Shown here piece after piece: positions 1 to 58,134 of a stretch of DNA of 64,000 bases. Within the stretch, counting starts at the first letter, position 1. Each line of letters opens with the position of its first letter. The translations under genes were made by a program, and so were the position numbers. This stretch comes from Macrostomum lignano (lineage: Eukaryota). A model generated the notes under the pieces. The model saw only the letters and a program-made list of their open reading frames with translations. It was not told the DNA's origin and made no database searches. The stretch is from assembly GCA_002269645.1 (NCBI GenBank), contig NIVC01000312.1, positions 62,001 to 126,000 of the forward strand. Reading direction: 5' to 3'.

Positions 1-770
1 CGAAGTTTCATTGTAAGCTTGAAGTTCATTGTAAGCTCGAAGTTTCATTTTAAGCTCGAAGTTTCATTGTAAGCTCGAAGTTTCATTGTAAGCTTGAAGT
101 TCATTGTAAGCTCGAAGTTTCATTGTAAGCTCGAATATTCATTGCAAGCTCGAAGATTCATTGTAAGCTCGAAGTTTCATTGTAAGCTCGAATATTCACT
201 GCAAGCTCGAAGATTCATTGTAAGCTCGAAGTTTCATTGTAAGCTCGAAGTTTCATTGTAAGCTCGAAGTTTCATTGTAAGCTCGAATATTCATTGCAAG
301 CTCGAAGATTCATTGTAAGCTCGAAGTTTCATTGTAAGCTCGAAGTTTCATTGTAAGCTCGAATATTCATTGCAAGCTCGAAGATTCATTGTAAGCTCGA
401 ATATTCATTGCAAGCTCGAAGATTCATTGTAAGCTCGAAGTTTCATTGTAAGCTCGAATATTCACTGCAAGCTCGAAGATTCATTGTAAGCTCGAAGTTT
501 CATTGTAAGCTCGAAGTTTCATTGTAAGCTCGAAGTTTCATTGTAAGCTCGAAGTTTCATTGTAAGCTCGAAGTTTCATTGTAAGTTCGAAGTTTCATTG
601 TAATCTCAAAGATTCATTGTAAGCTCGAATATTCATTGCAAGCTCGAAGATTCATTGCAAGCTCGAAGTTTCATTGTAAGCTCGAAGTTTCATTGTAAGC
701 TCGAAGTTTCATTGTAAACCCGAAAATTCACTGTAAACCCGAAAATTCACTGTAAACCCGAAAAGTCACT
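1..770. repeat. 19-bp minisatellite (CTCGAAGTTTCATTGTAAG)n, intronic
   Basis: Period of 19 read directly; degenerates from about 715; lies upstream of the MSP-domain exon. Confidence 0.95.
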
Positions 771-798: not shown

Positions 799-3700
799 AC
801 CGTCTTCAACGCCGCCGAGTCAGCCGCCGGCTCGCTCTGACAAGCTGCAGCTGCTGGCGGCGCCAGTTGAATCTGGCCTGTCGCGCGAGGCCTGCCAGGA
901 GGCGTTGAAGTCCGCTCCGTCCGAGGCGCTGATGGAACACCGGCTCCGCTGTCGGGTTGAGACGCCGAAACCGGCTGCTGGGTCGGCAGCGGCGGCGTCT
1001 GGACGACTGCCAGATGACCAGCAGTTGGCCGCTCTGCGCTCCGAGGTAAGCGAGCCGTCGGGTTCGACAGAATAATGAGGACTTTGCTGTGGCACATGCT
1101 TATAACCGTTGATGCTGAACTACTGCAATAACTGCATGAATATCCAGTACTGATTACAGACACTACTTAAGAGATCATGTTACTGAAACCGCATGAATTG
1201 AAAGTTTGCAGAAATATTTTTACGGACACTATTGCAGACACTGCTACAGACACAGCTGCAGACACAGCTAGAGACAGCTGCAGATACAGCTGCAGACACA
1301 GCTGCAGACACAGCTGCAGATACAGCTGCAGACACAGCTGCAGACACAGCTGCAGATACAGCTGCAGACACAGATGCAGACACTGCTACAGACACTGCTA
1401 CAGACACAGATGCAGACACAGCTGCAGACACTGCTACAGACACTGCTACAGACACAGATGCAGACACAGATGCAGACACAGCTGCAGACACTGCTACAGA
1501 CACTGCTACAGACACTGCTACAGACACAGATGCAGACACAGCTGCAGACACTGCTACAGACACAGCTACCCGCCAAACTTAATTCGTCCGATTTTTTGCT
1601 TTTAGCACCGGTATCTTGATCCGGTTTATTGTCCGGAATCGGCCCATATCCACAGTGTAAAGAAACCGGAACAGAGCCGGACAAAAAGTTACGTTTCAGG
1701 ACCAGGCGTTCAGATTTTATCGCCTTTGCCCTGTTTTATGTCCGGTGATTATTCCGAAGTTTGTTCCGGTGCCTGATCCGGTCAAAGAGAGCCGGATGTT
1801 GCGCCGGTTTTGTTCCGGTGCCTGATCCGGTCAAAGAGAGCCGGATGTTGCGCCGGTTGCTGGACCGTGGCATTGACCGATCCAAATGGGATCGAGACCG
1901 GACCGAAAGCCGGACCGGCCCGGTTTAATCTTGAACCGTTCTCTCCGGAGCAGGAGGCAGTCTTCCACGCGAATAGAAAATGAAAAGAAAATTGAAGAGT
2001 TTAAACTGAAGTACTTTTTTTTTCAATCCAGGCATTTGTCAACCTTTCCATTTCCATGGCAATTTATTTTTACTTCCGAAACATCGAAAGCACCGAACAT
2101 CGCAAATCACACATGGTCCCTTACAAATGCGTCGCTTCCCTTCTGGCGCTCACAAATGAGTCATAAAGGTGATAAAGGTGATAAAGGACGTTCAATTGGC
2201 CGAACCAACCGTCAAACCGCAAGCTTCAGCAAGTCAACGAGGCTACCGGCCGACTGCAAATCGTCCATGCTCGTGACGAGGTTAGCCGTCGTCACTGAAG
2301 CCGCCAACGTATCCGTAGCCGCAGTCGTAGTCGCAGGCGAAGGGTAAATGAGAACCGGATGGTTCTCATCAGGCTCCTCCATGACGACAACGATGGCATG
2401 GGAGTCTGTCGTCGAGGAGGCCTTCTTCGGCCTCTTGGTAGCGCTTGGCCTCGGGCCGCTCGATCCGGGCCTCGGGCCGGTGATACGGCGGCACTTCAGT
2501 TTCGGCAGACCCTGGCGAACGCGTGCCGTCTCGCGGCAACGCGAGAAAGCGCGTTGTAGTTGGCGCTTAGTGGCGATGACGCCAACGGTCTGCAGCCACT
2601 GCTTAGCGATAAGCAGTTTGGCTGGGTTAGCGGCAGCAGTCAGCCGGTCCCCCAGCTTTCGGCCCGAGAAATTTGCGCCTGAAAACTCCGTCTCAGAGAA
2701 CAGTGCCCGCAAGAGACACCGCAACAGCGACGAATGTTCCGAACGCAGTATTGCGGCGTAGTCCGGACGCTCTTCGTCGATGTCCACATGTGGCTGGCCA
2801 GCCTTTTCTTTGGCCTGCAAATATGTACGGAGATGAGCTTCCAGTATAGAACGGCTCCCGACCTTGACAAATATATTCGGTTGGCGGTCCGACAGTGCGA
2901 CGCGCCCACCGCTATTACTAGCACCGGCCGAGTTTTCAGCGCTGCAGGCAGTCATTATCGCGTGGGTGTCGCTGGCAGACAAGGCAGCGTCAGCGACGAA
3001 GCGTTTGGCCGAGAAATCACTATCGTCCGCGCTATCACAGCTCATGCGTGTTTCGTCGTCGCTGTGACCAGCGACGTGTGTGCTAGTATCAGCATTGGTG
3101 GACAAATTGTCCGGGTCGGCAACAAGCATAGTGGACGCCCTGATCAGGAATGCGTTGCATGATTGCGCCCTGTTTTGCATCTGCCGAATGACGTTGTCCT
3201 TGCGACGAATCTCACGCTCAAGGCTGCTCTCGCGCAGCGCCAAATAGGAGGTTCGCTCCTTCGCGTCGTCCAGACGCCGGCGCAGCTCCACTTCGGCAGC
3301 CGACTTGTCTCGTATCTCGCCTCCTGTCAGTGGAGACAAAAGTTAATGTTACTCCGATCAATCATACATTCCCCAGAACATTCAACACTTACTTAGTGTC
3401 TCCACTAAGATGTCCGCCTTGCGACTTTCCAGTAGCAGGCTTCGACAGGACGCGCAGCCTCGAGGTGGCTCTCTGGTCGGGGCGTGCACATTCGTGAGGC
3501 GACAAGAAGCCGTCGCTTCTTCACGACTTTCGAAGGGCCCACGGATGAGAGTGCCGATCCACCGACGGGCAGTTTTCCTATTACTTTTGGCCACTTTAAT
3601 GGCAACAACACTCCCAACAGAAACTGGGATGGGTCCGTCGCTGCGGCGCTGCACAATATTCTCCGTAGTGGAGACAACGTCCGTGCGTTCCCGGGATTCG

Positions 3701-6700
3701 TCATAGCGCATGATGAAGAAGCGCTCGGTAGGCTCTTGCTTGTACGGGAGCATATCGGATCCTTCTTTCGACGGGTTGCCACCGTCCCGGTTGACTCGCC
3801 TGCCACGTGTGTCTCGATCGCCAGAATCAGTAGCTGAGCACCCCGCCTCATGGGCGAAGCAATCGTCTGCGTCTGCACCATTGGGCGTCGGATTTGCGGT
3901 TGGCGGCTTAGGTATGGTCGTCTGGACAGCATCGATCACGGGTGTTAGCGTGTCACTGCCAGCTGGTAGATTACCATTCGCAGCTGGCTGATCGTCCTTC
4001 GGCTTCGCCTTCGCCTTCTTCAGAGATCTTGGAGCTTTAGACTTCGAAGCAGTACTAGCCGCAGCGGCGGGAGCTGCGGGAGCGGCAGCTTTTTTTCCGC
4101 TTGCGAAGCAGGTCGCCTTGCCCATTTAAAGACTGTAAGACATGGAGCAGGTTTTGAAATTAGGTAATTCCACGTAGAGATGACAAAACTCACGAGTAAG
4201 AAAAGTGTGTTCGCCTGCTTCTACGAAGAGACATGCAAATCGTTGTTTTTATTGGCATTTCGTCTGTAGCTCCCAGCTCTTCTCCAGATCCAGACTCCAT
4301 CATGCAGTCAAAAAGGTGGTAACGAAGAATAACATTAAAAACATACCTCCCCTGTTTACTCCCATGCAGAATTACATGGATGCTGCCACAAGAAAATTAA
4401 GTAGGTATATGTGCACATGTGTAGTTCGCTTAAGAATCAAACAACAACAATCAAACAATAGAGCAAGTTTTTTCTATTGCGCAAATCGAAATTACCGTGT
4501 CAATGCCTACACTGAGTAACATACTAACGTCCCTCACTAACTAACTCACTCACTAACCTGGAGTCAGTCACGCCTTCGAGAGGATCAAAAAGTCGGGATC
4601 TAAAAAAGTGTGGCTTTTAGTATGCTGCCCAGTATATCAGTCCAATCAATTCTTTCCGTGGGCCTTCTTCTCCTGCTGGAGCTCACGCAGATCCCTTAGT
4701 GGCCGTCTGCGGCGGCGTAGCGGTCGCATTGCCGCCACAGGTGCTTCCGGCGGAGTCTCGGGCATGTCAATCGCCCAGAACTGACGTGGATCCGCAATGG
4801 GTTTCGGTTGGTTCGACCGGTGTTTGCCGGCCTGCTGCAGTCGTCTTTGGCGGCTTTCTGGAGACAGGTTAGAATACCACGACTCGCAGTCCGGACAGCA
4901 GTGCGCCTGCAATTCTAGCCTGTCGGCTTTGCGCCTGCATGGGAAGACGCACGCCGGTCTCGAAGTCCTCTCCGGCAACAGGTTGTAATCAGCGCGGATT
5001 TGAGAAGACGACATGCCGGCATACAGGCCTGCAAAGAGACTGACCCGGCGGCTGGGTTCCGGTGCCGGCTCTGCGGCGGGTGGTACGTGGTACATGTCAG
5101 GGCCCTGCGTCTCAGAACCCTCCTCGTCGTCGTAGTTGAACCTGTCGACTGCCTCGGGTTCCGGTGCCGGCTCTGCGGCGGGTGGTACGTGGTACATGTC
5201 AGGGCCCTGCGTCTCAGAACCCTCCTCGTCGTCGTAGTTGAACCTGTCGACTGCCTCGGGTTCCGGTGCCGGCTCTGCGGCGGGTGGTACGTGGTACATG
5301 TCAGGGCCCTGCGTCTCAGAACCCTCCTCGTCGTCGTAGTTGAACCTGTCGACTGCCTCGGGTTCCGGTGCCGGCTCTGCGGCGGGTGGTACGTGGTACA
5401 TGTCAGGGCCCTGCGTCTCAGAACCCTCCTCGTCGTCGTAGTTGAACCTGTCGACTGCCTCGGGTTCCGGTGCCGGCTCTGCGGCGGGTGGTACGTGGTA
5501 CATGTCAGGGCCCTGCGTCTCAGAACCCTCCTCGTCGTCGTAGTTGAACCTGTCGACTGCCTCATCGGCGGGTTCCTCATTCGATGCCGCCACGGGTTTC
5601 GCTAGCACAAGTGGAGTCGAATCGAAAGGCCACATCGACTGCAACACTTGCGTACTAGGAATGTCATCTAATGCGACGATGGCCCTATGCGCCCGCACCA
5701 TGGACCCCGTGTTAAAAACTGGCGACGTGGGACGTGAACGGCCGAGTCGAAGGAGCTCAGAACGGAGCAAACGGTTCTCCTCTGTGAGGGCGCGGCAGAT
5801 GGGACAGCTGGCTGCGTGTGACCAGTGGTCCATCGCTGTAAAATTGGGGTAATCGTTATGGCGCTGAAGCGCGTTACCGTTCGAAATTCACAGCTATTCA
5901 ACATACTGTGTATGCAGCATACTATACTGTACTACAACTAATAGAGGTGCTGGAACTAGTCGTACAGTAACTATAACGATACAAATACAGATCACAGCAG
6001 AAACTGTCGCTGAGTTTGATTTCGACGTGAACGAGTATGTCCGATGACATCCTAGATGCTATAGTCATTGTACAAACGGAAGCAGAAGACAACAGAAAGG
6101 CAATGTGTTTTAACTCCTTTAGTTTTCGTCTCGTTTATTTCAATACCTACCTTAATTATATACCTTAGTGTTACATAGAACGGAAGAATTGAAACTATAA
6201 CTTTCATTTTTTAGGCGAAGAAACACATCATCACATTGTCTTAACTTCGAGCAATGAAGACATAACAAACGCTTGTACTGCTGTTCTCGTTGAGACAGTC
6301 TGACTGGAGCAAAATAGGTGTACATTTTTGGGTGGGCGTGACAGGAATTGGATATGTATTGTTTAGCCTCGGACCACTTAGTCATCTTAGCCAGTAGTTA
6401 GCGACAAAACAAAGCACCGAAGCATCCGAGTGGATCAATGATATGACAACTGTGGGTGAGGCAACAGTGCGATGTGGCTCTCGGAAAGGACACACGAACC
6501 GATGACATCCTCAAGCGGTAGTAGTAGCGGATCTCCGTAGTCCGCCAAATCGCCGAATGGATCGGCTGCAAGCCGCCGCACGTGAGCGCAACGGCAGCCA
6601 CGCCTAGCGGAATTGCCACGTACAGCACATAGTGCCTCTAACGGGTCCTGATCTGGTTCGCGGACCGGTAGAATTAGGACCCGAAGTGGCACTTGTGCAC

Positions 6701-9700
6701 CGGTACTACTAATGGCTTCAACTCGTGCAAAACGAAATGTCGTCGGACGAAACCCGGAAATTGCAACGAAACACGATGCTACAGTGCGGCGCAGTGGGCG
6801 GTTATCGTTTTGTCGGCTGATGAAAACTACAATGACCAGCCCTGAGGGCAGTGTCGCACTGCGCCACCCATCCAGCATGCCATGCGGTCGTCGAAGAACT
6901 ATGGAGTTACGGAGAACGATTTCCGTGCGCCGATGGCTCCGTTGTCGCCTCTCCAAGCCCTCAGCACCTAGCAGACGCGCTCCAATCTGGTTGGCGGCTA
7001 TCTGTCTCTCCACTGACGTAACCACGTCAGCCTCGTTGTTGCTCGAGCCATGAAGGAGCTGTTGTAATCGTTTGTGCATGGTTTCGAACAACCCAGTTGA
7101 TTGATGATGTATCGGCCCACCGGAGTCTACAGCGCTCAGCATGTGGCAGCAAACTTGATGGGCGTTGTACGTAAGCGCCCGAGTGGAATATAAGCGCGGT
7201 AAATTTGCGAGGAAGCATCTGAGGGACACCTCGACGTGGTCCAGTTCGTCCTTTGGCCCACCTTCAAGTCCCATCCAAAACACAGCCGTTGATAGAACTA
7301 GTAAATGGTTGTAGTGGTCCGGCGGCAGAAAATCACCCAGAACGAGCGGAGCGAACACTAAAATCCACATTTCTAGTTCGTGTCCACGAAGATGGCGCAG
7401 GTCCTTCAGCTTCCTAACACTGTGGCGTTGCACTGATCGTGGCACGAGAATGCGATTGAGACGCTCGCCGACATCGCCAAGTCTGGGGTGCAGGTCCGGA
7501 CAGTTAGTGTCTGCACGGTCTGGCTTCTCATTGCGGATTGCGAACATCTGTAGCAATATCCGACGAACGAGCCCGCCGCACAACTGGTGCAAATAACAGG
7601 GCGGACAACCTTTTATAAAATCAAAGCCAGGCAGCCTGCTTAGAGGAGAGTGTCCGTACACACCGAGTACGTCGCGGCAAGTACCACCGCCGTTGCTCAC
7701 ATGTAGATCGGCAAGGTGCGAAGTGTCAGCAGCATTACGCACTGTTGTCTGTGTACAGCCTAGCATAGCAGGAGCGTTCAACATGGCGGGTGTAGCTTCG
7801 ACGTGAAAAAGTCGCCCGCCGCCTTGCAAGTAACCGGTCCGCAGATAGCATTTGTCGCAGTATTTTCCGGAAAAGCGACGCATGCATAGAGCGTCCGCCC
7901 TCGCCGGGGCGTCCATCATCCCAAGGAGGGGATGGAGGCGCAGGACGCAAGTCTCGCCGTTGGCGTTGTTGTACGTTACACCTATGGTACGCAGGCTGGA
8001 CAAGACGTTTACCATAACAGGCAGAAATGCGGCGGCCTTGACTTTTTGCTTGCCAGCCCACACTCCTGCGATGAAAACGTATCGCAGTTTAACTCGGTCG
8101 TGTACCTCTACGATGGAAATGTAGAATGGGCACACTTCGACGCAGCTAGTACTGAACCGAGGAAAACCATCGAAGCAGAAAACGTACGACAGATCGGCTC
8201 GGCGCTGTACATCGATGACCTCCAGAAAGTCTCGGTACAACGAGCTGTTGTACACGTGCAAAACGTCCGGCTGCACGTCGCGGTCAGCAGGCCAAACGAC
8301 GTTGTCAAGAAGTCCACCGCTCTCGATAGACTGTCGGATCTGCTGACGCACGTCGAATGCGTAAAAGTTGGCCACAGATTCTTCGCCGCAGTGTGCACAG
8401 ACGTCACCATCGGAAACGTGCCGAAAACGAGTGCGACGCATGCAGCTATTGCAAACGGCGTTGCAAACCGTCGAACCAATCGCTGACTGCGCTGAGCTGA
8501 CGCACGACTCCAGACTTCGTCTTGTTCGCGGTAGACTACAGCCTGGCATAAGGCGATGAAGCAGCGCCATCAGTTTGTCGACTACATGATGCTTCATGTG
8601 CGTCTCTATGACGAACAGCATAATGTCTGACGCAGCCTGGCCCAGCGTTCCCGGAAGCGCTGGATGGAACGGCTGATGCAGTTGTGCATCCGGTACCGGC
8701 AGCGGTGCGTCTTCGTCGCTGTCAAAGTCGCCTTTGATCGAAAATGAAACGAATGAAATGACTTTAGAGGGAGGTGTATATGCATCTGCATCGCAATATG
8801 CAATTATAATGTATGTGACATTACTTACTGTCACCGACATCTGAGAAGCTACTACCAGAGTCAGATGAGGATGCGACATCAACGCTCTCACGATTAGTCT
8901 CGTTGTCTGCAGATGCAGACTCACTGTTACAGTCGTCCGCAGGTTCGGTATTGTCACTGTCAGCCGATGGGTCGACCTGATCACAGCATGCTTGTTGACC
9001 AGATGTGCCACCGTCACTGTCACCAGGAGCAGGATCAACAGTAACAGCATCACTGTCATCGTCACTGCTAACAGCGCCGTTAGAAGCTGCACTTGCAGCG
9101 TCAGCGTCAGCTGACGTGCCAGCGCCGCGTTTCTCCACGGGGGATCGCGATCAGGCTGGAGTTGCCGCATTTAACTTTCTTCGAAACCGGTATGCCCGCA
9201 TGTACAACCGCCTGTGCAGCCTTTTTTCATCGTCCTCCATACGTCTAGGCAGCTGAGGGCGGGGTATTACTGATTCATTAGCACGCGTACATGTCGAAGG
9301 AACAGAATCTACGAGTAAATGAGCTATAAGTTTATAAACTTATCTAGCGGTTTGACTTCTGTGACAAACTTAGACTTAGACTTTGACCTAATTTAAAATA
9401 CTTCTTAGCTATTTCTTGTAGGACCTATGTAGGATATAATGGCCCTGCAGATTTAATGGCCCTGAAAATATAATAGGACGCGACTCTTAGCCAAGAAAGA
9501 AAGAAAGAAAAATTTAGGGTTGCTGGATTTTGGATAACGGATGTACGACGTATGGCATAAATAATACAGGAAAGAAAGAACAAGTGCGATAAACAAATTG
9601 AACCAAAACAGAAGACGTTTCCACTACATCTTCAGTAACGCATCAATTTATTTGACAAACGAACTCCCCAACATCTGCGAGGTTGTATTACCCCTCTCGC

Positions 9701-11145
9701 TGCTAGCCGCAGTTATCTCAGCAGATCGACTTACGTTAACGTAAGCCTCGACTCTCTTGTAAATTTACAAGAGAGTCGAGGCTTCTTCAACCCTCCTCCT
9801 TTTGCAACCGGGCTTGGGACCGGCTTTGCGGAGTTAAAGACAGCCAGTGTTTCCTACACTCAGCTGCTTCATTTTCTGGAAGCATCGGTACTTCCAGCCA
9901 GAAGCAGCCGAAGAAGAAGCCCATTTTTAGCGGGATAGCAATTATAGCCATTATTAAACCAGCTTTCCGAACCGGAATATTGTCCGTTGCGTACCGGTGA
10001 AACGACGGCTCGGCGCCCAGTCGAAATAACGGGCGAAAATCCGGTACAGAAATGACGCATTACCCCTCCTGCACCGGTTTTTCGTCACGCTCAAAACGGA
10101 TGCTCACATAACAAACAAGCGGACAATATTCCGGACGAATAACCGGCGCTCATTGTTCCGGATTTGTCCGATTCTTAGAATTTATTGGACCGGTCTTTGT
10201 CCGGTTTTGTTCTGCTCCGGTTTCGTCCGGTTGTGGTCCGAAAACAAGCTCTTTTCCGGCACAATCCGGGTGAAGGAGTATAAATTTCGGATCTAAATCC
10301 GGCTGCAGAGTTTGGCGGGTACAGACACAGCTGCAGACACAGCTGCAGACACAGCTGCAGACACAGCTGCAGACACTGTTACAGACACAGCTACAGACAC
10401 AGCTGCAGACACAGCTGCAGACACAGCTGCAGATACAGCTGCAGATACAGCTGCAGACACAGCTAGAGACACAGCTGCAGATACAGCTACAGACACAGCT
10501 GCAGATACAGCTGCAGACACAGCTGCAGACACTGCTACAGACACTATTGCAGACACAGCTACAGACACTGTTACAGACACAGCTGCAGACACAGCTGCAG
10601 ACACAGCTGCAGACACAGCTACAGACACAGCTGCAGACACAGCTGCAGACACAGCTGCAGATACAGCTGCAGACACAGCTAGAGACACAGCTGCAGATAC
10701 AGCTGCAGACACAGCTGCAGACACAGCTGCAGATACAGCTGCAGACACAGCTGCAGATACAGCTGCAGATACAGCTGCAGACACAGCTAGAGACAGCTGC
10801 AGATACAGCTGCAGACACAGCTGCAGATACAGCTGCAGACACAGCTAGAGACACAGCTGCAGATACAGCTGCAGATACAGCTGCAGACACAGCTAGAGAC
10901 AGTGCTACAGACACCACTCCAGACCCCCAAATCCTCGTACGCCCTCCCCCCGGCAGGTGAGCCGTCTGTCTGGCATGGTCAGCCGCCTAGCGGTGCAGCA
11001 GTCGCAGCGCCTGGCCTACACCAAGTACAGCCTGTGGCTGCTGGCCTTTGGAGTCATTTTCCTGGCCTTTCTATTGGGCTGGAGCTGCGGCCGGCAGGCC
11101 GCCTCATCAAGTCATGCAGGCCCGCCTCACTCTACAGATCTGTGA
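799..11145 (+). CDS. MOSPD2: MSP-domain tail-anchored ER protein, MOSPD2-like (3' part only; exons ~799-1045 and 10957-11145)
   Basis: The + frame at 782-1045 reads ...DKLQLLAAPVESGLSREACQEALKSAPSEALMEHRLRCRVE...LAALRSE, resembling the MSP-domain end of MOSPD2 (MEHRLRC). The phase-0 donor GAG|gtaagc (1045/1046) joins the acceptor cag|GTG (10956/10957), giving VSRLSGMVSRL...YSLWLLAFGVIFLAFLLGW, a short coiled coil plus C-terminal TM. The exon start at 799 is tentative. Confidence 0.7.
1225..1568. repeat. 12-bp minisatellite (GCAGACACAGCT)n, left half of an array split by the transposon
   Basis: Period 12; same unit resumes at 10320. Confidence 0.95.
1761..1858. repeat. 49-bp direct duplication in the CCGG-rich subterminal region
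   Basis: TTGTTCCGGTGCCTGATCCGGTCAAAGAGAGCCGGATGTTGCGCCGGTT occurs at 1761 and 1810. Confidence 0.9.
2212..4125 (-). CDS. Transposon accessory protein with coiled coil and BEN-like domain; exons 4125-3393 and 3323-2212
   Basis: A 69-bp GT-AG intron (3392-3324, gtaagt...ctgacag, phase 1) joins ORFs 3382..4125 and 2212..3339 in frame. LLRCLLRALFSETEFSGANFSG...NPAKLLIAKQWL fits the BEN-domain pattern and follows a heptad-rich segment. Confidence 0.75.
4646..5833 (-). CDS. RBBP8-like: Compact CtIP/Ctp1/Sae2 (RBBP8)-like protein carried by the transposon
   Basis: The C-terminus RRKADRLELQAHCCPDCESWYSNLSPESRQRRLQQAGKHR...DPRQFWAIDMPET aligns almost without gaps to remembered human CtIP [40 protein letters not shown]...TPENFWEVGFPST. 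The N-terminal CPICRALTEE plus coiled coil resembles CtIP CDRCAVTEE. Confidence 0.85.
   Translation of the reverse strand: MDHWSHAASCPICRALTEENRLLRSELLRLGRSRPTSPVFNTGSMVRAHRAIVALDDIPSTQVLQSMWPFDSTPLVLAKPVAASNEEPADEAVDRFNYDDEEGSETQGPDMYHVPPAAEPAPEPEAVDRFNYDDEEGSETQGPDMYHVPPAAEPAPEPEAVDRFNYDDEEGSETQGPDMYHVPPAAEPAPEPEAVDRFNYDDEEGSETQGPDMYHVPPAAEPAPEPEAVDRFNYDDEEGSETQGPDMYHVPPAAEPAPEPSRRVSLFAGLYAGMSSSQIRADYNLLPERTSRPACVFPCRRKADRLELQAHCCPDCESWYSNLSPESRQRRLQQAGKHRSNQPKPIADPRQFWAIDMPETPPEAPVAAMRPLRRRRRPLRDLRELQQEKKAHGKN
5054..5563 (-). repeat. Five identical 102-bp in-frame coding repeats (34 aa EAVDRFNYDDEEGSETQGPDMYHVPPAAEPAPEP)
   Basis: Period 102 verified (5054 vs 5156); 510 bp total. Confidence 0.95.
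6152..6385 (-). CDS. Small Cys/His-containing ORF of unknown function (77 aa)
   Basis: ATG directly follows ctaag, with a CTAAC branch-like motif upstream and AATAAA downstream (6139-6134). Contains CHAH and CLHC. No family recognised. Confidence 0.4.
   Translation of the reverse strand: MTKWSEAKQYISNSCHAHPKMYTYFAPVRLSQREQQYKRLLCLHCSKLRQCDDVFLRLKNESYSFNSSVLCNTKVYN
6435..9240 (-). CDS. EnSpm/CACTA-type DDE transposase; predicted exons 9240-8829 (in-frame TGA at 9153-9151) and 8731-6435
   Basis: Motifs CFDGFPRF, MMDAPAR...CDKC, YLH, HQVCCH and GLFE match the D, D, CxxC, [M/L]H, H(3-4)H, E signature of CMC transposases. A 97-bp GT-AG phase-1 intron (8828-8732) links an acidic N-terminal exon in frame. 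Confidence 0.9.
9730..9784. other. Overlapping perfect palindromes (16 bp, 9730-9745; 42 bp, 9743-9784)
   Basis: CTTACGTTAACGTAAG and AAGCCTCGACTCTCTTGTAAATTTACAAGAGAGTCGAGGCTT each equal their reverse complement. Confidence 0.95.
10320..10915. repeat. 12-bp minisatellite (GCAGACACAGCT)n, right half
   Basis: Same unit as 1225-1568. Confidence 0.95.
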
Positions 11146-13029: not shown

Positions 13030-16000
13030 ATGGCGGAAACGAAGCTGATGCTGGCGCCTTTGCCGTCGCCCTCACCGTCGTCAAATATGTCAAAGACGGC
13101 AGCGGCGGCGGTCAAGCCTAAGAATCGGCGAAAACGCGAGAGCGAGTTCGCTAGCGACACCGACACTGACAGCGACGCCGACGGATCTACAGTCGACTTG
13201 AGCGTCGGCGAATTCGCCAAACTCGGCCGCGCAATGCAGGAACTGCGCGCAATCCACGCCGCTCTTCGTCGGCAACGTCGGCAACTTCGCACTCGCGAGG
13301 CGGCCCTAGCGGCCCGCGAATCGGCCGCCGTGGCGGAGGCCGAGGCCGCCGCCGTTTCCGCCGCTCGTGCCGAGGCCGACGAGCGGGCCCGACTGGAGCT
13401 CCGGCTGCTCGCCTCCGAGGAGGCTGGCGCGTCGGCTCGACGCGAATGCGCCCGACTGCGCGACGCGTTCAAATCGGCTCGGGAATCGTCTGCGCAGCTG
13501 CGGCGCCAACTGGCCGAGGCCGAAGCCGAGCGCGACCGACTGGCGCGGGCCGAGCGCTCGCATCGCGCCCGATTGGCAAATCTTGGCGCCGATAATTCCA
13601 GCGCGATATCGTCATCGCCGTCGGCGGCGGCTCCTCCTTCCGCTAGGCGTCGATGCTGCGTCGATGCGGCCGGATCGAGCGGCGTCGATGTCGGAGTGCA
13701 GACTCCGGCCAAGTGGATGGCCGCCGCTGTCGCCGCTGCCGAGGCTGAGGCTGCGGCGCCCGCGGCTACGGCTGCCCTACAACTGGCCGAGGTGACTTGG
13801 CTGTGAATGTGGCATTTAATTGGTGAATGTGTTGTTTCTGTTGGTGAATGAAAGTGTGTGAGTTGGTGAATACAGTGTTTGAGTTGGTGAATGCAGTGTT
13901 TGAGTTGGTGAATGCAGTGTTTGAGTTGGTGAATGCAGTGTTTGAATTGGTAAATGCAGTGTTTGAATTGGTGAATGCAGTGTTTGAGTTTGTGAATGCC
14001 GTATTTCAGTTGGTGAATGCAGTGTTTGAGTTGGTGAATGCAGCATTTGAATTGGTGAATGCAGTGTTTGAGATTGTGAATGCCGTATTTCAGTTGGTGA
14101 ATGCAGTGTTTGAGTTGGTGAATGCCGTGTTTGAGTTGGTGAATGCAGTGTTTGAGTTGGTGAATGCCGTGTTTGAGTTTGTGAATGCAGTGTTTGAGTT
14201 TGTGAATGCCGTGTTTGAGTTGGTGAATGCAGTGTTTGAGTTGGTGAATGCAGCATTTGAATTGGTGAATGCAGTGTTTGAGTTTGTGAATGCCGTGTTT
14301 GAGTTGGTGAATGCAGTGTTTGAGTTGTTGAATGCAGCATTTGAATTGGTGAATGCAGTGTTTGAGTTTGTTAATGCCGTGTTTCAGTTGGTGAATGCAG
14401 TGTTTGAGTTTGTGAATGCCGTGTTTGAGTTGGTGAATGCCGTGTTTGAGTTGGTGAATGCAGTGTTTGAGTTGGTGAATACAGTGTTTGAGTTGGTGAA
14501 TGCAGTGTTTGAGTTGGTGAATGCAGTGTTTGAATTGGTGAATGCAGTGTTTGAGTTTGTGAATGCCGTGTTTCAGTTGGTGAATGCAGTGTTTGAGTTG
14601 GTGAATGCAGCATTTGAATTGGTGAATGCAGTGTTTGAGTTGGTGAATGCCGTATTTCAGTTGGTGAATGCAGTGTTTGAGTTGGTGAATGCCGTGTTTG
14701 AGTTTGTGAATGCAGTGTTTGAGTTGGTGAATGCCGTGTTTGAGTTTGTGAATGCAGTGTTTGAGTTTGTGAATGCCGTGTTTGAGTTTGTGAATGCCGT
14801 GTTTGAGTTGGTGAATGCAGTGTTTGAGTTGGTGAATGCAGCATTTGAATTGGTGAATGCAGTGTTTGAGTTTGTGAATGCCGTGTTTGAGTTGGTGAAT
14901 GCAGTGTTTGAGTTGGTGAATGCTGTGTTTGAGTTAGTGAATGCAGCATTTGAATTGGTGAATGCAGTGTTTGAGTTTGTGAATGCCGTGTTTGAGTTGG
15001 TGAATGCAGTGTTTGAGTTGGTGAATGCTGTGTTTGAGTTGGTGAATGCTGTGTTTGAGTTGGTGAATGCAGCATTTGAATTGGTGAATGCAGTGTTTGA
15101 GTTTGTGAATGCCGTGTTTGAGTTTGTGTCAAATGCAGTTTTATTCGGCGAAAACATAAACCTTAAAACTTGAATGTTTATTCACTTTAAATATCAAATA
15201 ATTTGCTTGGTTAGTGATCTTTTTCCCCGTCAAAAAAAGTGCTTCATCCAAATTCGCCCTCAGTCCCTGATCTCCTGGGACAACTCTGTCGGTCGCCTGG
15301 CCTGGTCGCCAATTCCGAGTTCGCCATCGACGCCAACGCCTTCGCCGCGGCCTGTAGACGCCGAAGCCGCACTGCGCTGCATGCCGCCTCTTGTCGAGTT
15401 GCTCCAGCAGCGGCTCGGCTCGCCATCGACTCGACAGCGCAGTCAGAAGACGCATTCGGTAACCTTAGCAACAGCCTCGGCCAGTCTCCGCTTTCTTCAT
15501 CGCCTGCTGTCCACTGCTGAGCTGGGTGGCGCCGGACAGCGAGTCAGCGGCGCCGCCTGCGTTCGCCAACTGGCCGAATCGCTGGCCCAGCGCCTGCTGC
15601 CTCGTCGGGATCGAGTGGAGTGCGACCAGCTGCTGCTGCTGGCCTGTCTGCTGATTCTGCGCGCGTCGATTGGCGACTTTGAAGCCCGACAGCGGGCGGT
15701 CGAAGCGCTGCGGAAACGGCTGCTGGAGTCCAGGGAGGCCCGGCGCGTTGCCGTCAGGTATGCCTGTCCTGTGCTTGTCCGTTGTTCGTCCGGTGTCTGT
15801 CTGGTGTCTGTCCGGTGTTCGTCCGGTGCCTGTCCGGTGCTTGTCCGGTGTTCGTCCGGTGTCTGTCCGGTGCTTGTCCGGTGTTCGTCCGGTGCCTGTC
15901 CGGTGCCTGTCCGGTGTTCGTCTGGTGTCTGTCTGGTGTCTGTCCGGTGCCTGTCCAGTGCCTGTCGGTTTCTATCCGGTGCCTGTCCGGTGCCTGTCGG

Positions 16001-35883: not shown

Positions 35884-36718
35884 GCTTCCTCAGCAATCAT
35901 CCATGATGTATTTCAAATGTGTTATAAACAAAAATGTAGCAGGAACTCGACCACAGACCTTTGCAGCAATGCCTAAAAAGTCCGTCTGTCTCAGGCCTAA
36001 AATGCATTTGGGAGCATAGAAAAGCATGTGTTTTTTGCTATCACCATTGCATTTATTTTGCTAAATTTAATAGATTTAAAGCTAAGCTAAGCAAAGCTAA
36101 CATATTGAAAAAAAAAAAAACAGTAAGAATTTTGCTAAAATTTCAAACTGAAATTAAGTTAAACTTTAATTCTATAATTAAAACAACTTTCTGCTATGCC
36201 TTTCTTTATGACTTACCCAAAAAAGTAGAAAAAAATGATCAGAGTTATCAATTTTCCAACTTACCTTTGGTATGTCACTATCACAATTTATGCCTGCTAG
36301 GTTTGTTAGCAGTTGCACATGTTTTTTATGTTTTTTTGTTAAATTCTCCATTGCCAATCTAACAAAAATAAATTAACTCAAGCTTAGGCCTGGTGGTTTT
36401 TAGCGTTAGGTCTCTGCATCTACTTTGCTTCAATTATTTGGAGCTCTATGCATAAGGTCAACCATGGGGTGGGTGTACAGCGGTCATGTGACTTTCTAAT
36501 CGTTAGGCATGTACACTCTCTCTGTGCCTTGAGGGTTAGTCCTCATGGCTGTGAATCGCATGGCAGCACCTTTTAGCTCATTTTTAGTATATTGCTATGG
36601 AAATAAACCTCAAATTAATTCAGACCGCTTGTAAAAAGTTAGGGCCACTGTACACCCTGTGAGCTTGTGCCCCGGGCTTATTGCCATGTTTACCTGTGTG
36701 TCCCCCCCCACCCCGCAG

Positions 36719-39830: not shown

Positions 39831-40254
39831 TCCTGTTAATTTTTAACCTAATAAATCCAAGCAATACTGTTTATTTTCGTGCTTTTCTATACTAAAAAAT
39901 TATCAATAAATAAACCCGATCGATTCGTGGCATGATTCATTTAGTTGACGCTTTGGTTACCTTCGTTTCTCGGAAGCATCTATCGTAGTTTACATTGAAT
40001 TTTTTACTCAATACCATCGGAAAGTTATTTACGAGCGTAACAGGTTAACCATATTGTCCCTGAATAATGTACTAATATTATAATGCTAATTACAACATAT
40101 AATAAAAAGCAGGTCCCCGTATCTAGATCGATCTTGTTGAAGATCTAAATCTTTCAAATTCAGCCCTATTTGCCTGCTGAGACACAACTGAACTAACCGC
40201 AACTCAATTCTCTACCAATACTTTTTTACCTGTAATTATCCAATTTTATCAACC

Positions 40255-41470
40255 CTTTTACCATAATTCTATCCATTCCACCCTCAAACTCATCCATTCC
40301 ACCCTCAACCTTATCCATTCCACCCTCAACCTTAACCATTCCACCCTCAACCTTAACCATTCCACCCTCAACCTTATCCATTCCACCCTCAACCTTAACC
40401 ATTCCACCCTCAACCTTATCCATTCCACCCTCAACCTTAACCATTCCACCCTCAACCTTATCCATTCCACCCTCAACCTTAACCATTCCACCCTCAACCT
40501 TAACCATTCCACCCTCAACCTTAACCATTCCACCCTCAACCTTATCCATTCCACCCTCAACCTTAACCATTCCACCCTCAACCTTAACCATTCCACCCTC
40601 AACCTTAACCATTCCACCCTCAACCTCATCAACTCTATTCTCAACCTCATCAACTCTATTCTCAACCTCATCAACTCTATTCTCAACCTCATCAACTCTA
40701 TTCTCAACCTCATCAACTCTATTCTCAACCTCATCAACTCTATTCTCAACCTCATCAACTCTATTCTCAACCTCATCAACTCTATTCTCAACCTCATCAA
40801 CTCTATTCTCAACCTCATCAACTCTATTCTCAACCTCATCAACTCTATTCTCAACCTCATCAACTCTATTCTCAACCTCATCAACTCTATTCTCAACCTC
40901 ATCAACTCTATTCTCAACCTCATCAACTCTATTCTCAACCTCATCAACTCTATTCTCAACCTCATCAACTCTATTCTCAACCTCATCAACTCTATTCTCA
41001 ACCTTATCCATTCCACCCTCAACCTTAACCATTCCACCCTCAACCTTAACCATTCCACCCTCAACCTTAACCATTCCACCCTCAACCTTAACCATTCCAC
41101 CCTCAACCTTATCCATTCCACCCTCAACCTCATCCATTCCACCCTCAACCTTATCCATTCCACCCTCAACCTTATCCATTCCACCCTCAACCTCATCCAT
41201 TCCACCCTCAACCTTATCCACTCCACCCTCAACCTTATCCATTCCACCCTCAACCTTAACCATTCCACCCTCAACCTTAACCATTCCACCCTCAACCTCA
41301 TCCATTCTACCCTCAACCTCATCCATTCTACCCTCAACCCCATCCATTCTACCTTCAACTCCATCTACTCTACCCCCAACCCCATCCATTCTACCCTCAA
41401 CCCCATCTATTCTAACCCCCATTTCATCCATTGTACCCTCAACCCTTCCCATTCTACCCTCAACATTACT
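40255..41470. repeat. 21-bp minisatellite with a central variant block; open heptad frame on the minus strand
   Basis: CCATTCCACCCTCAACCTTA(A/T) flanks and a central TCAACTCTATTCTCAACCTCA block (~40625-41000). Confidence 0.92.
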
Positions 41471-41690
41471 CATTCTTACCCTAGACCCAGCCTGCCTACC
41501 CTAACTTTATCCATTCTACCTTCTGTAGATAAAACTGGTTCTACCCGTTAACCCTATCATTTCTACCCAACCCATCGTTTCTACTTCTCCGCAAATCAGG
41601 AACCAAAAAAACGCTGCTATATAACCTACAGCGGCTTGCATTCGAATTAATTACCTTCATGACTAATTACCGCATGCCAGTAAGCGCATA

Positions 41691-47194: not shown

Positions 47195-47850
47195 TCGGTG
47201 AAACTCCTTGTCACTCTCAGCTGTCACTCAGTGCGACTCCCTGTCACTCTCTCAGCTGTCACTCAGTGTGACTCCCTGTCACTCTCCCAGCTGTCACTCA
47301 GCGTGACTCCCTGTCACTTTTTCAGCTGTCACTCAGTGAGACTCCCTGTCACTCTCTCAGCTGTCACTCAGCGTGACTTCCTGTCACTCTCTCAGCTAGC
47401 ACTCAGTGTGACTCCCTGTCACTCTCTCAGCTTTCACTCAGTGAGACCCTGTCACTCTCTCAGCTGTCACTCAGCGTGACTTCCTGTCACTCTCTCAGCT
47501 AGCACTCAGTGTGACTCCCTGTCACTCTCTCAGCTTTCACTCAGTGAGACCCTGTCACTCTCTCAGCTGTCACTCAGTGAGACTCCCTGTCACTCTTTCA
47601 GCTTTCACTCAGTGAAACTCCCTGTCACTCTCTCAGCTGTCACTCAGTGAGACTCCCTGTCACTCTCTCAGCTGTCACTCAGTGAAACTCTCTGTCACTC
47701 TCTCAGCTGTCACTCAGTGAAACTCCCTGTCACTCTCTCAGCTGTCACTCAGTGAAACTCCCTGTCACTCTCTCAGCTGTCACTCAGTGAAACTCCCTGT
47801 CACTCTCTCAGCTAGCACTCAGTGAAACTCCGTCACTCTCTCAGCTTTGC
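47195..47850. repeat. 35-bp minisatellite between GATB and GUCD1
   Basis: CACTCTCTCAGCTGTCACTCAGTGAAACTCCCTGT units. Confidence 0.92.
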
Positions 47851-47929
47851 TCTCATATTTGCTTCAAATTCAATGCTCGCTACTTCATGTAGTAACAAAT
47901 ACATCAAAACAATCTATATATACGAGCGT

Positions 47930-57545: not shown

Positions 57546-58134
57546 GGATAGCTAGAGTTAGAATGGTACATATGAGGTCACAAATCTAAATAAAGTTACA
57601 CCTGAAGGTCACTAAACTAGAGGGTAGATTTTATTTTAAAGGTACATTTTGAATGAGGTTGACAGTCGTAGCCTCCTTTTTAAGGGTACATATGAAGGTC
57701 TCCGTGGTTGAGACGATAATCATCAATTATGCTTTAGTAAACTACGAGTATATATGATTTCAATCGCGCATTTACAGCCAATTTCTATTGTTTTTTTTTG
57801 CTGTTGCAAAAGTATATAAAAGACGTAATTGAGATCTTTCTAGCAAACGAACTGCTGTGCATTTTTGTAAAAACCAGTTAGTTTTTGGCTTGGCTTTGTT
57901 GATTTCTTTTTTGTTTTGTTTTAACTTTAAATAGAATTTCCCTAAGCTCAGCGGTTAACGCGTCTGACTCTTTCGCCACGATCCCCCCCCCCCCCAAGAC
58001 ACATGTCTGACCATCCATTAGAAGTCAGAGCCGCTGTACACCCCGTGTGAGCGGGTGTGTGAGCCAGGAATCTCAGAAGTCAGCGGAATGGGAATTTCAG
58101 CTTTATAAATCAACAGCAAATCCAGCGCATCAGA

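What the first reader, a model, noticed from the sequence alone, without database searches (positions are those of the whole stretch)
4646..5833. A cut-and-paste transposon carries its own CtIP/Sae2 DNA-end-resection factor
Seen: an intronless 395-aa ORF lies wholly between the TIRs and is co-oriented with the transposase. Its H-C-CxxC-E..Y...KHR...P..FW....P.T block aligns ungapped over 29 residues, then with one insertion, to the human CtIP C-terminal domain as I remember it. It also has the N-terminal CxxC-TEE/coiled coil of CtIP. Known: this domain is the MRE11-RAD50-NBS1 cofactor that starts resection and opens hairpin-capped or protein-blocked ends, steering repair towards HR or MMEJ. 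CMC transposases are related to RAG/Transib. Inference: the element may control repair of its own excision breaks, for example by favouring homologous gap repair that restores the donor copy, by opening hairpin ends, or by acting as a decoy for host MRN. I know of no described EnSpm element with this cargo.
Basis: partly seen in the sequence, partly recalled or inferred. Interest (0 to 1): 0.95.

Follow-up and report, generated by a model that had tools for sequence, protein, structure and literature searches.

The report
Transposon carrying a CtIP-like repair gene
An 8.8-kb cut-and-paste DNA transposon in a flatworm-like genome carries, between its own two genes, an intact compact copy of the DNA-break-processing factor CtIP/Sae2; this could let the element steer repair of its own excision breaks, but only this one copy is known and the one related element found lacks the gene.

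Summary
ORF 4646-5833 (-) is intact and 395 aa long. Its C-terminus is a genuine SAE2/CtIP domain: it scores above the Pfam threshold, and an exhaustive search gave 111 hits. The best is Macrostomum lignano CtIP at 56% identity, and all family-invariant residues are kept. The ORF lies inside an 8,755-bp element (1567-10321) with perfect 13-bp terminal inverted repeats and CCGG-rich subterminal repeats, inserted in phase into a 12-bp minisatellite.

The element encodes a DDE transposase with the C(2)C and H(3-4)H marks of the CACTA/EnSpm-Mirage-Chapaev-Transib clade. It also encodes a two-exon accessory gene (the apparent ORF247 and ORF375 joined).

A complete related element from a marine metagenome has the same two genes and CCCGC termini but no CtIP gene, so the CtIP gene is lineage-specific cargo. 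In M. lignano the host CtIP is multi-exon and sits among housekeeping genes, so the window ORF is not in the position of the host locus.

Two features are notable. Asp replaces the CDK-site Thr (human T847). Five identical acidic S-E-T repeats resemble NBS1-binding motifs.

Function for the transposon is inferred, not shown. A passenger capture remains a strong rival. I found no prior description.

The parts
1567..10321 (-). Whole transposon, 8,755 bp including the terminal TA dinucleotides. All genes are on the minus strand.
   Evidence: It is bounded by a perfect 13-bp inverted pair. The 12-bp minisatellite (CAGACACAGCTG)n stops at 1566/1568 and resumes in phase at 10322. No second copy is present in the window.
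10309..10321 (-). Terminal inverted repeat at the transposase-proximal end: TACCCGCCAAACT, or TA target duplication plus CCCGCCAAACT.
   Evidence: The related element L001 also starts with CCCGC.
1567..1579 (+). Terminal inverted repeat at the distal end.
1580..2000 (.). Subterminal CCGG-rich short repeats, including a 49-bp x2 tandem at 1760-1858.
   Evidence: There are 19 CCGG sites in 1501-2000 against 0-3 per 250 bp in most of the interior. The same TCCGG-type subterminal repeats occur in L001.
9751..10308 (.). Subterminal CCGG-rich short repeats at the other end.
6435..9240 (-). Transposase gene. Exon 1 runs 9240->8829, a 43-nt intron 8828->8786 (GTAAGT...CAG), exon 2 8785->6435. There is an in-frame TGA at 9153-9151 (codon 30). 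An unspliced 911-aa ORF also runs 9170->6435. In 911-aa numbering the catalytic residues are D334, D420 and E696, with C438-x2-C441 and H671-x4-H676.
   Evidence: It is 48% identical to P0001 (E=9e-183). Weaker relatives hit Pfam Transposase_21, DUF4218 and Plavaka below threshold.
4646..5833 (-). CtIP/Sae2-like gene: an intronless ORF of 395 aa.
4751..4954 (-). SAE2/CtIP C-terminal domain core (aa 294-361). It holds CxxC (C313, C316), K337-H338-R339, D348-P349 at the CDK-site position, F352-W353 and T360.
5054..5563 (-). Five 100%-identical 102-bp tandem repeats inside the ORF. Each encodes 34 aa that include DDEEG-S-E-T-Q.
   Evidence: M. lignano CtIP has one DDEGSET at the matching place.
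5742..5806 (-). N-terminal CxxC (C10, C13) followed by a short predicted coil, LTEENRLLRSELLRL.
   Evidence: The similarities are only marginal.
2212..4125 (-). Accessory gene of the element family. Exon 1 runs 4125->3393, a 69-nt intron 3392->3324, exon 2 3323->2212. The product is 614 aa. It was listed mechanically as ORF247 + ORF375.
   Evidence: A conserved GTAAGTGT donor sits at the homologous position in L001. Both spliced CDS are in frame and free of stops. The exons are homologous to L001 7509-8237 and 8575-9342 (E=1e-14 and 3e-15).
1233..1566 (.). Left flank of the insertion site: 12-bp minisatellite.
10322..10914 (.). Right flank of the insertion site: the same 12-bp minisatellite, same orientation and phase.

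Best explanation
What it is (shown). The ORF sits in a DNA transposon of the CACTA/EnSpm-Mirage-Chapaev-Transib kind that inserted into a minisatellite. The family's core is two genes: a DDE transposase and a two-exon accessory protein with a CxxC plus a long coiled coil. In this lineage a third gene sits between them. It is a compact, intronless paralogue of the host's CtIP/Sae2, and its closest relative is the CtIP of the flatworm Macrostomum lignano.

The protein keeps three parts:
- a short N-terminal CxxC and coil;
- five identical acidic S-E-T/T-Q repeats, homologous to a single DDEGSET motif of the flatworm host protein;
- the complete C-terminal domain, which in yeast and human CtIP binds RAD50 and switches on the MRE11 endonuclease.

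How it most likely works (inferred).
1. The gene is expressed together with the transposase.
2. The protein engages host MRE11-RAD50-NBS1. The S-E-T repeats would act as CK2-type NBS1 FHA/BRCT ligands. The C-terminal domain would act as the RAD50-dependent activator.
3. Asp348 sits where the CDK-phosphorylated Thr/Ser normally is, so activation would not depend on the cell cycle.
4. MRN would then clip the hairpin-capped or transposase-bound ends left by excision and start resection.
5. The donor break would be repaired by homologous recombination, which restores the element from the sister or homologue, or by microhomology joining, rather than left unrepaired.
For: Domain identity. Pfam SAE2 scores above its cut-off. 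There are 111 exhaustive-search hits, and the scanned set is mostly SAE2/CtIP_N proteins. All invariant residues are kept. The domain is no more diverged from 55 other CtIPs than the M. lignano host gene is (33.9% against 32.4% mean identity).

Position inside a transposon. Perfect TIRs interrupt a minisatellite in phase. CCGG repeats are concentrated at both ends. The ORF lies between the two genes that are adjacent in the complete relative L001, which has 33-bp TIRs starting with CCCGC.

Not at the host locus. M. lignano CtIP is multi-exon and sits between acetyl-CoA synthetase and EMP24 genes at two loci. No such neighbours occur in the window.

Mechanistic leads.
- D348 replaces a T/S that is present in 52 of the 57 aligned sequences.
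- CDK phosphorylation of Sae2 S267 / CtIP T847 drives RAD50 binding and MRE11 endonuclease activation, and S267E is proficient (PMC11662671).
- Ctp1 pSXpT motifs, the CtIP pSer-Glu-pThr271 motif and the multiple SDT repeats of MDC1 all bind NBS1 (PMC8079451).
- No revertants were recovered after Ac/Ds (hAT) excision, which leaves flanking hairpins, in yeast lacking Mre11 or Sae2 (PMC3299998).
- EnSpm-type transposases share C(2)C/H(3-4)H motifs with Transib and RAG1 (PMC12730594), and these motifs are present here.
Against: - Only one copy is known, and the single related element retrieved lacks the gene.
- No expression, copy-number or selection data could be obtained.
- The five repeats are 100% identical at the DNA level. 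They are therefore very young and could be slippage rather than adaptation.
- The M. lignano host protein itself has Ala at the CDK position. The site may simply be unconstrained in this lineage.
- The N-terminal oligomerisation region of CtIP is not detectably conserved.
- The spliced transposase model of this copy has an in-frame TGA at codon 30. This copy may not be autonomous.
- Hairpin formation by this transposase family is assumed, not shown.
Confidence: 0.42

Rival explanations
1. Passenger gene. The element picked up a copy of a host CtIP gene, or of its last exon fused to element-derived 5' sequence, as CACTA and Mutator-type elements are known to do. The ORF is still open because the capture is recent or by luck, and it does nothing for the transposon.
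For: The gene is absent from the only related element. Only a single copy has been seen. The perfect 102-bp repeats point to recent, unstable sequence. The N-terminal CxxC resembles the element's own accessory protein about as well as it resembles CtIP, which would fit a chimera. This copy may have a disabled transposase. Capture of host genes by DNA transposons is well documented, for example TET/JBP genes in fungal transposons (PMC12730594).
Against: The gene is a complete ATG-to-stop ORF of 395 codons with every family-invariant residue retained. It shows no excess divergence relative to a host orthologue. It is only 53-56% identical to the nearest known host gene, so the capture is not obviously recent if that species is the source. 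It is co-oriented with the element's genes and neatly placed between them, with an acceptor-like motif 2 nt before its ATG.
Confidence: 0.36
2. Decoy or dominant-negative. The compact protein binds NBS1/RAD50 but lacks the regulatory middle and tetramerisation parts of CtIP. It would therefore block host resection, or checkpoint signalling, at transposon-made breaks and favour end joining.
For: The protein is very short compared with most CtIPs, and the N-terminal domain is not detectably conserved. It has multimerised candidate NBS1-binding motifs.
Against: The activating C-terminal domain is complete and carries an acidic residue at the activating phosphosite. A comparably short natural CtIP (P0006, 315 aa) has the same layout. 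From my own knowledge, not checked here, C-terminal fragments of Sae2/CtIP are reported to suffice for MRX/MRN stimulation in vitro.
Confidence: 0.1
3. It is simply the organism's own CtIP gene, and the transposon context is coincidental: TIRs by chance, a host gene that a transposon landed beside, or an assembly chimera.
For: No other CtIP locus is visible in the 64-kb window. The species and its host CtIP locus could not be identified. The architecture resembles the short CtIP P0006.
Against: The ORF lies between two genes that are contiguous parts of one element in an independent relative, and it lies inside perfect TIRs that split a minisatellite in phase. It is intronless, whereas the closest host orthologue has at least two introns and conserved housekeeping neighbours that are absent here.
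Confidence: 0.07

Closest known systems
CtIP / Sae2 / Ctp1 / Com1 (Pfam PF08573), the cofactor of MRE11-RAD50-NBS1
   Same: The C-terminal domain has the CxxC, [R/K]HR, P-x-x-F-W and conserved Thr (human T859 position). It also has a basic RRRRP tail, an acidic SXT motif upstream and a short coil at the N-terminus. The closest relative is M. lignano CtIP, at 53% identity over 113 aa (E=2e-31).
   Different: It is encoded inside a transposon, is intronless and is only 395 aa long. Asp sits at the CDK site, where 52 of the 57 aligned sequences have T or S. The SXT-containing unit is amplified five times. There is no detectable CtIP_N domain.
CACTA/EnSpm-Mirage-Chapaev-Transib ('CMCT') DNA transposons, including the TA-duplicating ESTA lineage (PMC12730594)
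   Same: [quoted passage not shown] The TIRs are short and the subterminal repeats abundant. A second, non-catalytic gene is present, as with TnpA of En/Spm. A 2-bp TA duplication is compatible with the flanks. Relatives give weak hits to Pfam Transposase_21, DUF4218 and Plavaka.
   Different: The termini are CCCGC (or TACCC), not CA..TG or CACTA. The window's own transposase hits no Pfam family. The duplication length is ambiguous (TA or 10 bp) because the flanks are periodic. The related element L001 shows no duplication.
DNA transposons that carry host-derived accessory genes
   Same: A host-type gene sits inside the TIRs beside the transposase, and it is present in some lineages of a family and absent in others. 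TET/JBP dioxygenases in fungal EnSpm, Plavaka, hAT, Harbinger and Helitron elements are the example read here (PMC12730594). From my own knowledge, RPA-like genes in Helitrons and ULP1 proteases in plant MULE/CACTA elements are further examples.
   Different: Here the cargo is a double-strand-break resection cofactor. I found no report of this gene in any transposon.
MDC1 SDT repeats and Ctp1 SXT motifs, which are NBS1 FHA/BRCT ligands
   Same: The window ORF holds tandem acidic Ser-x-Thr motifs in a disordered segment (DDEEGSETQ x5).
   Different: The resemblance is at motif level only. Phosphorylation and NBS1 binding were not tested, and the residue after Ser is Glu rather than Asp. Human CtIP pSer-Glu-pThr271 is reported to bind NBS1 (PMC8079451).

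Membership tests
SAE2/CtIP family (PF08573) | Profile match above the curated threshold | tested here: met
   The full ORF scores 21.7 bits and the C-terminal fragment 25.7 bits, against a cut-off of 19.8. phmmer gives E=3e-8 to 1e-6 against vertebrate CtIPs in a library of 1.84e9 proteins.
SAE2/CtIP family (PF08573) | Conserved CxxC and RHR motifs of the C-terminal domain | tested here: met
   C313-P-D-C316 and K337-H338-R339 are present. KHR also occurs in other members, such as P0011.
SAE2/CtIP family (PF08573) | CDK-phosphorylatable Ser/Thr-Pro before the F-W motif (Sae2 S267, CtIP T847) | tested here: not met
   The window ORF has Asp348-Pro349. Of the 57 aligned sequences, 52 have T or S; M. 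lignano has Ala and P0036 has Glu. An acidic residue could mimic the phosphate (PMC11662671); that is an inference.
SAE2/CtIP family (PF08573) | Conserved Thr at the ATM/ATR site (Sae2 T279, CtIP T859) | tested here: met
   T360 lies in P-E-T-P, in a nearly invariant column.
SAE2/CtIP family (PF08573) | N-terminal oligomerisation coiled coil | tested here: inconclusive
   There is no CtIP_N hit. The LTEENRLL motif resembles the coils of P0006, M. lignano and fish CtIP with shuffle p of 0.01-0.09.
SAE2/CtIP family (PF08573) | Stimulates the MRE11 endonuclease and promotes resection | not testable with these tools
   This needs biochemistry or genetic complementation.
[quoted passage not shown] | DDE catalytic triad in an alignable transposase | tested here: met
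   D334 (DGF), D420 (DAPAR) and E696 (FE) are conserved wherever the relatives cover them.
[quoted passage not shown] | [quoted passage not shown] | tested here: met
   C438-D-K-C441 is invariant. H671-QVCC-H676 is H(4)H in the window and P0001, and H(3)H in P0002 and P0003.
[quoted passage not shown] | Profile match to a CACTA-type transposase family | tested here: inconclusive
   The window protein and P0001 hit nothing. Relative P0003 hits Transposase_21 at E=6e-5. Relative P0002 hits DUF4218 at 1.7e-4 and Plavaka at 1.9e-3. All three are below the curated cut-offs.
[quoted passage not shown] | Target-site duplication of 2-5 bp | tested here: inconclusive
   Both a TA duplication (with an 11-bp TIR) and a 10-bp duplication (with a 13-bp TIR) restore the minisatellite in phase. 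L001 shows no duplication.
[quoted passage not shown] | Termini 5'-CA..TG-3' (most members) | tested here: not met
   The termini are CCCGCC...GGCGGG in the window and CCCGCT...AGCGGG in L001.
Transposon cargo gene (as opposed to a host gene or a one-off capture) | Lies inside the TIRs, between the element's own genes | tested here: met
Transposon cargo gene (as opposed to a host gene or a one-off capture) | Present in other members or copies of the element | tested here: not met
   The gene is absent from L001, the only relative retrieved; a non-coding 1-kb spacer sits in its place. Copies within the source genome could not be examined.
Transposon cargo gene (as opposed to a host gene or a one-off capture) | Purifying selection among copies, and expression with the element | not testable with these tools
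Exact-sequence look-ups failed.

The most novel reading that the evidence does not exclude
A cut-and-paste transposon has equipped itself with a minimal, cell-cycle-independent CtIP. Five NBS1-docking S-E-T repeats are joined to a RAD50/MRE11-activating domain whose CDK switch is hard-wired 'on' by Asp. With it the element brings its own trigger for MRN-dependent hairpin or protein-block clipping and resection to the breaks it makes, biasing donor-site repair towards copy-restoring recombination.
Probability: 0.22. Interest if true: 0.9.

Novelty: new variant of a known kind. Interest (0 to 1): 0.66.

Why it matters
Transposons depend on host double-strand-break repair to survive their own excision, yet they are almost always pictured as passive users of it.

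A transposon-borne CtIP would be a case of a eukaryotic DNA transposon encoding a pathway-choice factor for break repair. That would give a natural experiment on how resection initiation affects transposon copy number. The protein would also be a naturally minimised CtIP of 395 aa with an acidic residue at the CDK switch, useful for dissecting MRN activation and possibly for biasing repair in genome engineering.

Even if it is only a passenger, it documents whole-gene capture of a core repair factor by an animal CACTA-like element. The work also defines a previously unannotated two-gene transposon family that occurs in a flatworm-like genome and in a marine metagenome.

Tried and rejected
Dead ends.
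- Word-indexed homologue searches with the full CtIP-like ORF and the full transposase found nothing, probably because low-complexity words filled the candidate list. The transposase core alone then worked.
- Exact-sequence look-ups failed for the four ORFs, for the spliced accessory protein, for repeat-number variants (1-4 units) of the CtIP-like protein and for one host ORF. The source genome and its other element copies could therefore not be reached.
- Scans of JGI metagenome contigs and IMG/VR with the transposase and CtIP alignments found no relatives.
- PDB sequence searches found nothing for either protein or for the transposase profile.
- The AlphaFold2 model of the transposase from a 5-sequence alignment was useless (mean pLDDT 36.5). 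I ran no fold search on it.
- Rfam found nothing in the window.

Readings considered and rejected.
- Retrocopy with a poly(A) tail: no A-run or duplication flanks the ORF.
- A host locus syntenic with M. lignano: no ACS or EMP24 homologues are in the window.
- ORF247 and ORF375 as separate genes: they are two exons of one gene.
- The hydrophobic N-terminal 128 aa of the 911-aa ORF as real protein: a spliced, acidic N-terminus homologous to P0001 fits better.

Species identity stays unresolved. The window shares a dispersed repeat of about 90 bp at 82-87% identity with M. lignano loci, and has a similar G+C content. That does not distinguish M. lignano from a relative.
Full report
OBSERVATION. 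It runs 4646..5833 on the minus strand, from ATG to TGA, and is 395 aa long. Its centre is five 100%-identical 102-bp tandem repeats at 5054-5563. Each repeat encodes a 34-aa unit, AVDRFNYDDEEGSETQGPDMYHVPPAAEPAPEP(E/S).

DOMAIN IDENTITY. Pfam SAE2/CtIP C-terminus (PF08573) matches above its curated threshold. The whole ORF scores 21.7 bits, E=4.4e-4. The last 134 aa alone score 25.7 bits, E=2.5e-5.

An exhaustive HMMER search of those 134 aa against 1.84 billion representative proteins returned 111 hits at E<=1e-3:
- P0005 at 5.5e-24 and 56% identity. This is PAA54340.1 of the flatworm Macrostomum lignano.
- A 315-aa metagenomic protein at 5.7e-14.
- Then vertebrate and invertebrate CtIPs.

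I scanned 57 sequences (the query fragment plus the 56 best hits). Of these, 44 carry Pfam SAE2 and 6 carry CtIP_N. In a ten-sequence alignment the window protein keeps every invariant column: R300, R305, L308, C313, C316, L323, H338, R339. It also keeps the near-invariant P349, W353 and T360. The C-terminal domain assignment is therefore secure.

The N-terminal 'CxxC-TEE coil' is not secure. There is no CtIP_N hit. Shuffle tests give only marginal similarity to CtIP N-termini (p 0.01-0.09). They give about equal similarity to a CxxC-coil in the element's own accessory protein (p 0.04-0.16).

THE ELEMENT. A perfect 13-bp inverted pair, TACCCGCCAAACT, sits at 1567-1579 (+) and 10309-10321 (-). 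Outside it, on both sides, runs the same 12-bp minisatellite, (CAGACACAGCTG)n, in the same orientation.

Removing the element restores the array in phase under either of two readings:
- a TA duplication with 11-bp TIRs beginning CCCGCC;
- a 10-bp duplication with 13-bp TIRs.
The duplication length cannot be read from this site. The interruption itself is good evidence of an insertion.

CCGG-containing short repeats are concentrated in the roughly 400 bp inside each end. No second copy is present in the window.

THE TRANSPOSASE. The 911-aa ORF 6435..9170 (-) has no Pfam, NCBIfam or PDB match.

A search with its core found P0001 (863 aa, 48% identical, E=9e-183) and three weaker relatives. The five-sequence alignment shows these conserved features:
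- first Asp, in a DG[FL]P motif (D334);
- an invariant DAPAR (D420);
- an invariant C-x2-C (C438, C441);
- a YN-x-H-x(3-4)-H motif (H671, H676);
- an FE (E696).

[quoted passage not shown] It reports 2-5-bp duplications, including TA-duplicating lineages (PMC12730594).

Two of the weaker relatives give collinear sub-threshold Pfam hits. P0003 hits the CACTA transposase family Transposase_21 (6e-5). P0002 hits DUF4218 (1.7e-4) and Plavaka (1.9e-3).

The termini are CCCGC, not CA..TG. The window protein itself matches no curated profile. The structure route failed (mean pLDDT 36.5), so I ran no fold search.

GENE MODELS.
- Transposase. It contains a 43-nt GTAAGT...CAG intron (8828->8786). Splicing joins an acidic, Ser-rich first exon that starts at ATG 9240 to the catalytic exon, in frame. 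It also extends the alignment with P0001 towards the N-terminus. The N-terminal RRLYMRAYRFRRK resembles P0001's RRYMRLYRLRGR. This model has one in-frame TGA at 9153-9151 (codon 30). This copy may therefore be crippled, unless translation starts at ATG 9170 on unspliced RNA.
- Accessory gene. The mechanical ORF247 (3382..4125) and ORF375 (2212..3339) are two exons of one gene. A GTAAGTGT donor lies at the homologous codon in both the window and L001. Both spliced products are in frame and free of stops: 614 aa with a 69-nt intron in the window, and 483 aa with a 382-nt intron in L001.

THE RELATED ELEMENT. P0001 lies on a 10,198-bp Tara Oceans metagenome contig, L001. L001 is a complete element:
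- 33-bp TIRs, 97% complementary, at 97-129 and 10011-10043, beginning CCCGC;
- TCCGG-rich subterminal repeats;
- the transposase;
- homologues of both accessory exons (E=1e-14 and 3e-15).

Between the transposase and the accessory gene, where the window has the CtIP-like ORF, L001 has about 1 kb of A+T-rich sequence. It holds no ORF of 80 aa or more and no TBLASTN similarity to the CtIP-like protein. The family core is therefore two genes, and the CtIP gene is an addition in the window's lineage (or a loss in L001's).

IS IT THE HOST GENE? In M. lignano the closest homologue occurs at two loci, L003 and L004. At both, the gene spans about 3 kb with at least two introns. At both, it lies between an acetyl-CoA synthetase gene and an EMP24/GP25L gene. 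That is an ordinary host context with no transposase.

The window ORF is intronless. Translated comparison of L004 with the window found only the CtIP C-terminus in common. The host genes nearest to it are a GatB gene and a Guanylate_cyc_2-like gene some 40 kb away.

Similarity to the host protein covers the C-terminal 113 aa (53%, E=2e-31). Below significance, it also covers the DDEGSET motif and the LT-EN-R-L coil.

The domain is no more diverged from 55 other CtIPs than the M. lignano host gene is. Mean identity is 33.9% against 32.4%. Window-specific changes exceed M. lignano-specific ones for 20 outgroups and are fewer for 30. The outgroups were chosen by similarity to the window, which biases this comparison in its favour.

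The window shares a dispersed repeat of about 90 bp (82-87% identity) and a similar G+C content with M. lignano loci. It probably comes from Macrostomum or a relative, but I could not establish the species. Without the species I cannot say whether the capture is old or recent.

MECHANISM (inference). Two features suggest more than a random capture.

First, the residue aligned with the CDK site (Sae2 S267, CtIP T847) is Asp348. Of the 57 aligned sequences, 52 have Thr or Ser there. Phosphorylation of that site drives the RAD50 interaction and MRE11 endonuclease activation, and S267E is proficient (PMC11662671). M. lignano's own CtIP has Ala at this position, which weakens the argument.

Second, each of the five repeats carries Ser-Glu-Thr in a polyanionic context, followed by Gln. 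Three kinds of NBS1 FHA/BRCT ligand resemble it (PMC8079451):
- CK2-type pSXpT motifs in Ctp1;
- a pSer-Glu-pThr motif in human CtIP;
- the multiple SDT repeats of MDC1.

Yeast lacking Mre11 or Sae2 yields no revertants after excision of the hairpin-forming hAT element Ac/Ds. That paper notes it could not separate hairpin opening from the role of Mre11 and Sae2 in end joining (PMC3299998).

The most likely working model is this. The protein is made with the transposase and recruits and activates host MRN at excision breaks independently of cell-cycle phase. MRN opens or clips the ends and starts resection. I put this at roughly 0.4.

The rivals are a functionless passenger at about 0.35, a decoy at about 0.1, and a mis-read host gene or artefact at under 0.1.

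NOVELTY. Full-text searches found no transposon-encoded CtIP/Sae2. Transposons that carry host-derived accessory genes are a known kind, for example TET/JBP genes (PMC12730594). This is therefore a new variant of a known kind, with an unusually suggestive cargo.

Noticed in passing
window 8786-9240 (-): The transposase gene has a 43-nt GTAAGT...CAG intron (8828->8786). Its likely true N-terminus starts at ATG 9240 in another frame. That spliced model contains an in-frame TGA at 9153-9151 (codon 30), so this copy's transposase may be disabled.
   Followed up: partly
window 2212-4125 (-); L001 7509-9342 (+): The apparent ORF247 and ORF375 are two exons of one accessory gene (614 aa). The GTAAGTGT splice donor is conserved in the metagenomic relative. 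The protein has a CxxC followed by a long coiled coil and no Pfam match. Its C-terminal part looked BEN-domain-like to me from memory, but Pfam did not detect that.
   Followed up: partly
window 9743-9784: A perfect 42-bp palindrome (21-nt arms, no spacer) lies in the element's 5' non-coding region between the TIR and the transposase start.
   Followed up: no
window 5834-5845 and 4126-4145 (-): Splice-acceptor-like motifs (TTTTACAG and TCTTACAG) lie 2 nt and 9 nt upstream of the ATGs of the CtIP-like ORF and the accessory gene. They could be cis-splice or spliced-leader acceptors for expression from one element transcript. Joining the transposase exon-1 donor to the first motif would be in frame with the CtIP ORF.
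   Followed up: no
L003 10001-13072 and L004 10001-13315 (M. lignano): The M. lignano host CtIP has Ala at the CDK-site position and Phe in place of the nearly invariant Trp (QAPNFF). Both are unusual among the 57 aligned sequences.
   Followed up: partly
L005 1-1603 (JGI metagenome 3300040801): The second-closest relative is an intronless 315-aa CtIP-like gene with the same coil and C-terminal-domain layout. It sits on a short contig flanked on both sides by 20-21-bp tandem repeats that share GTCGGCGAGAGCAAC. Its organism and context are unknown.
   Followed up: partly
window 36471-36560 and 58001-58063: Copies of a dispersed repeat of about 90 bp are also present in introns or intergenic DNA of the M. 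lignano loci L003 and L004, at 82-87% identity. This is the only nucleotide-level link to a named species.
   Followed up: partly
window 1-755, 13820-15128, 40226-41473, 58973-59957, 60933-63710 and others: The window is unusually rich in long minisatellite arrays (periods of 19, 21, 12 and 33 bp, among others), many of which create long spurious ORFs. Translated comparison also matched the 60.9-63.7 kb array to repeats in M. lignano locus L004.
   Followed up: no
window 45655-47015 (+), 47822-48454 (+): Host genes are present: GatB (GatB_N, E=1.6e-22) in at least two exons, and a Guanylate_cyc_2 / peptidase C39-like gene. They show that the window is ordinary chromosomal DNA.
   Followed up: partly
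L001 1000-3000: The metagenomic relative has about 3.8 kb between its left TIR and the transposase start, including a stretch of about 2 kb at 30-34% G+C. This may be a nested insertion or a long leader.
   Followed up: no
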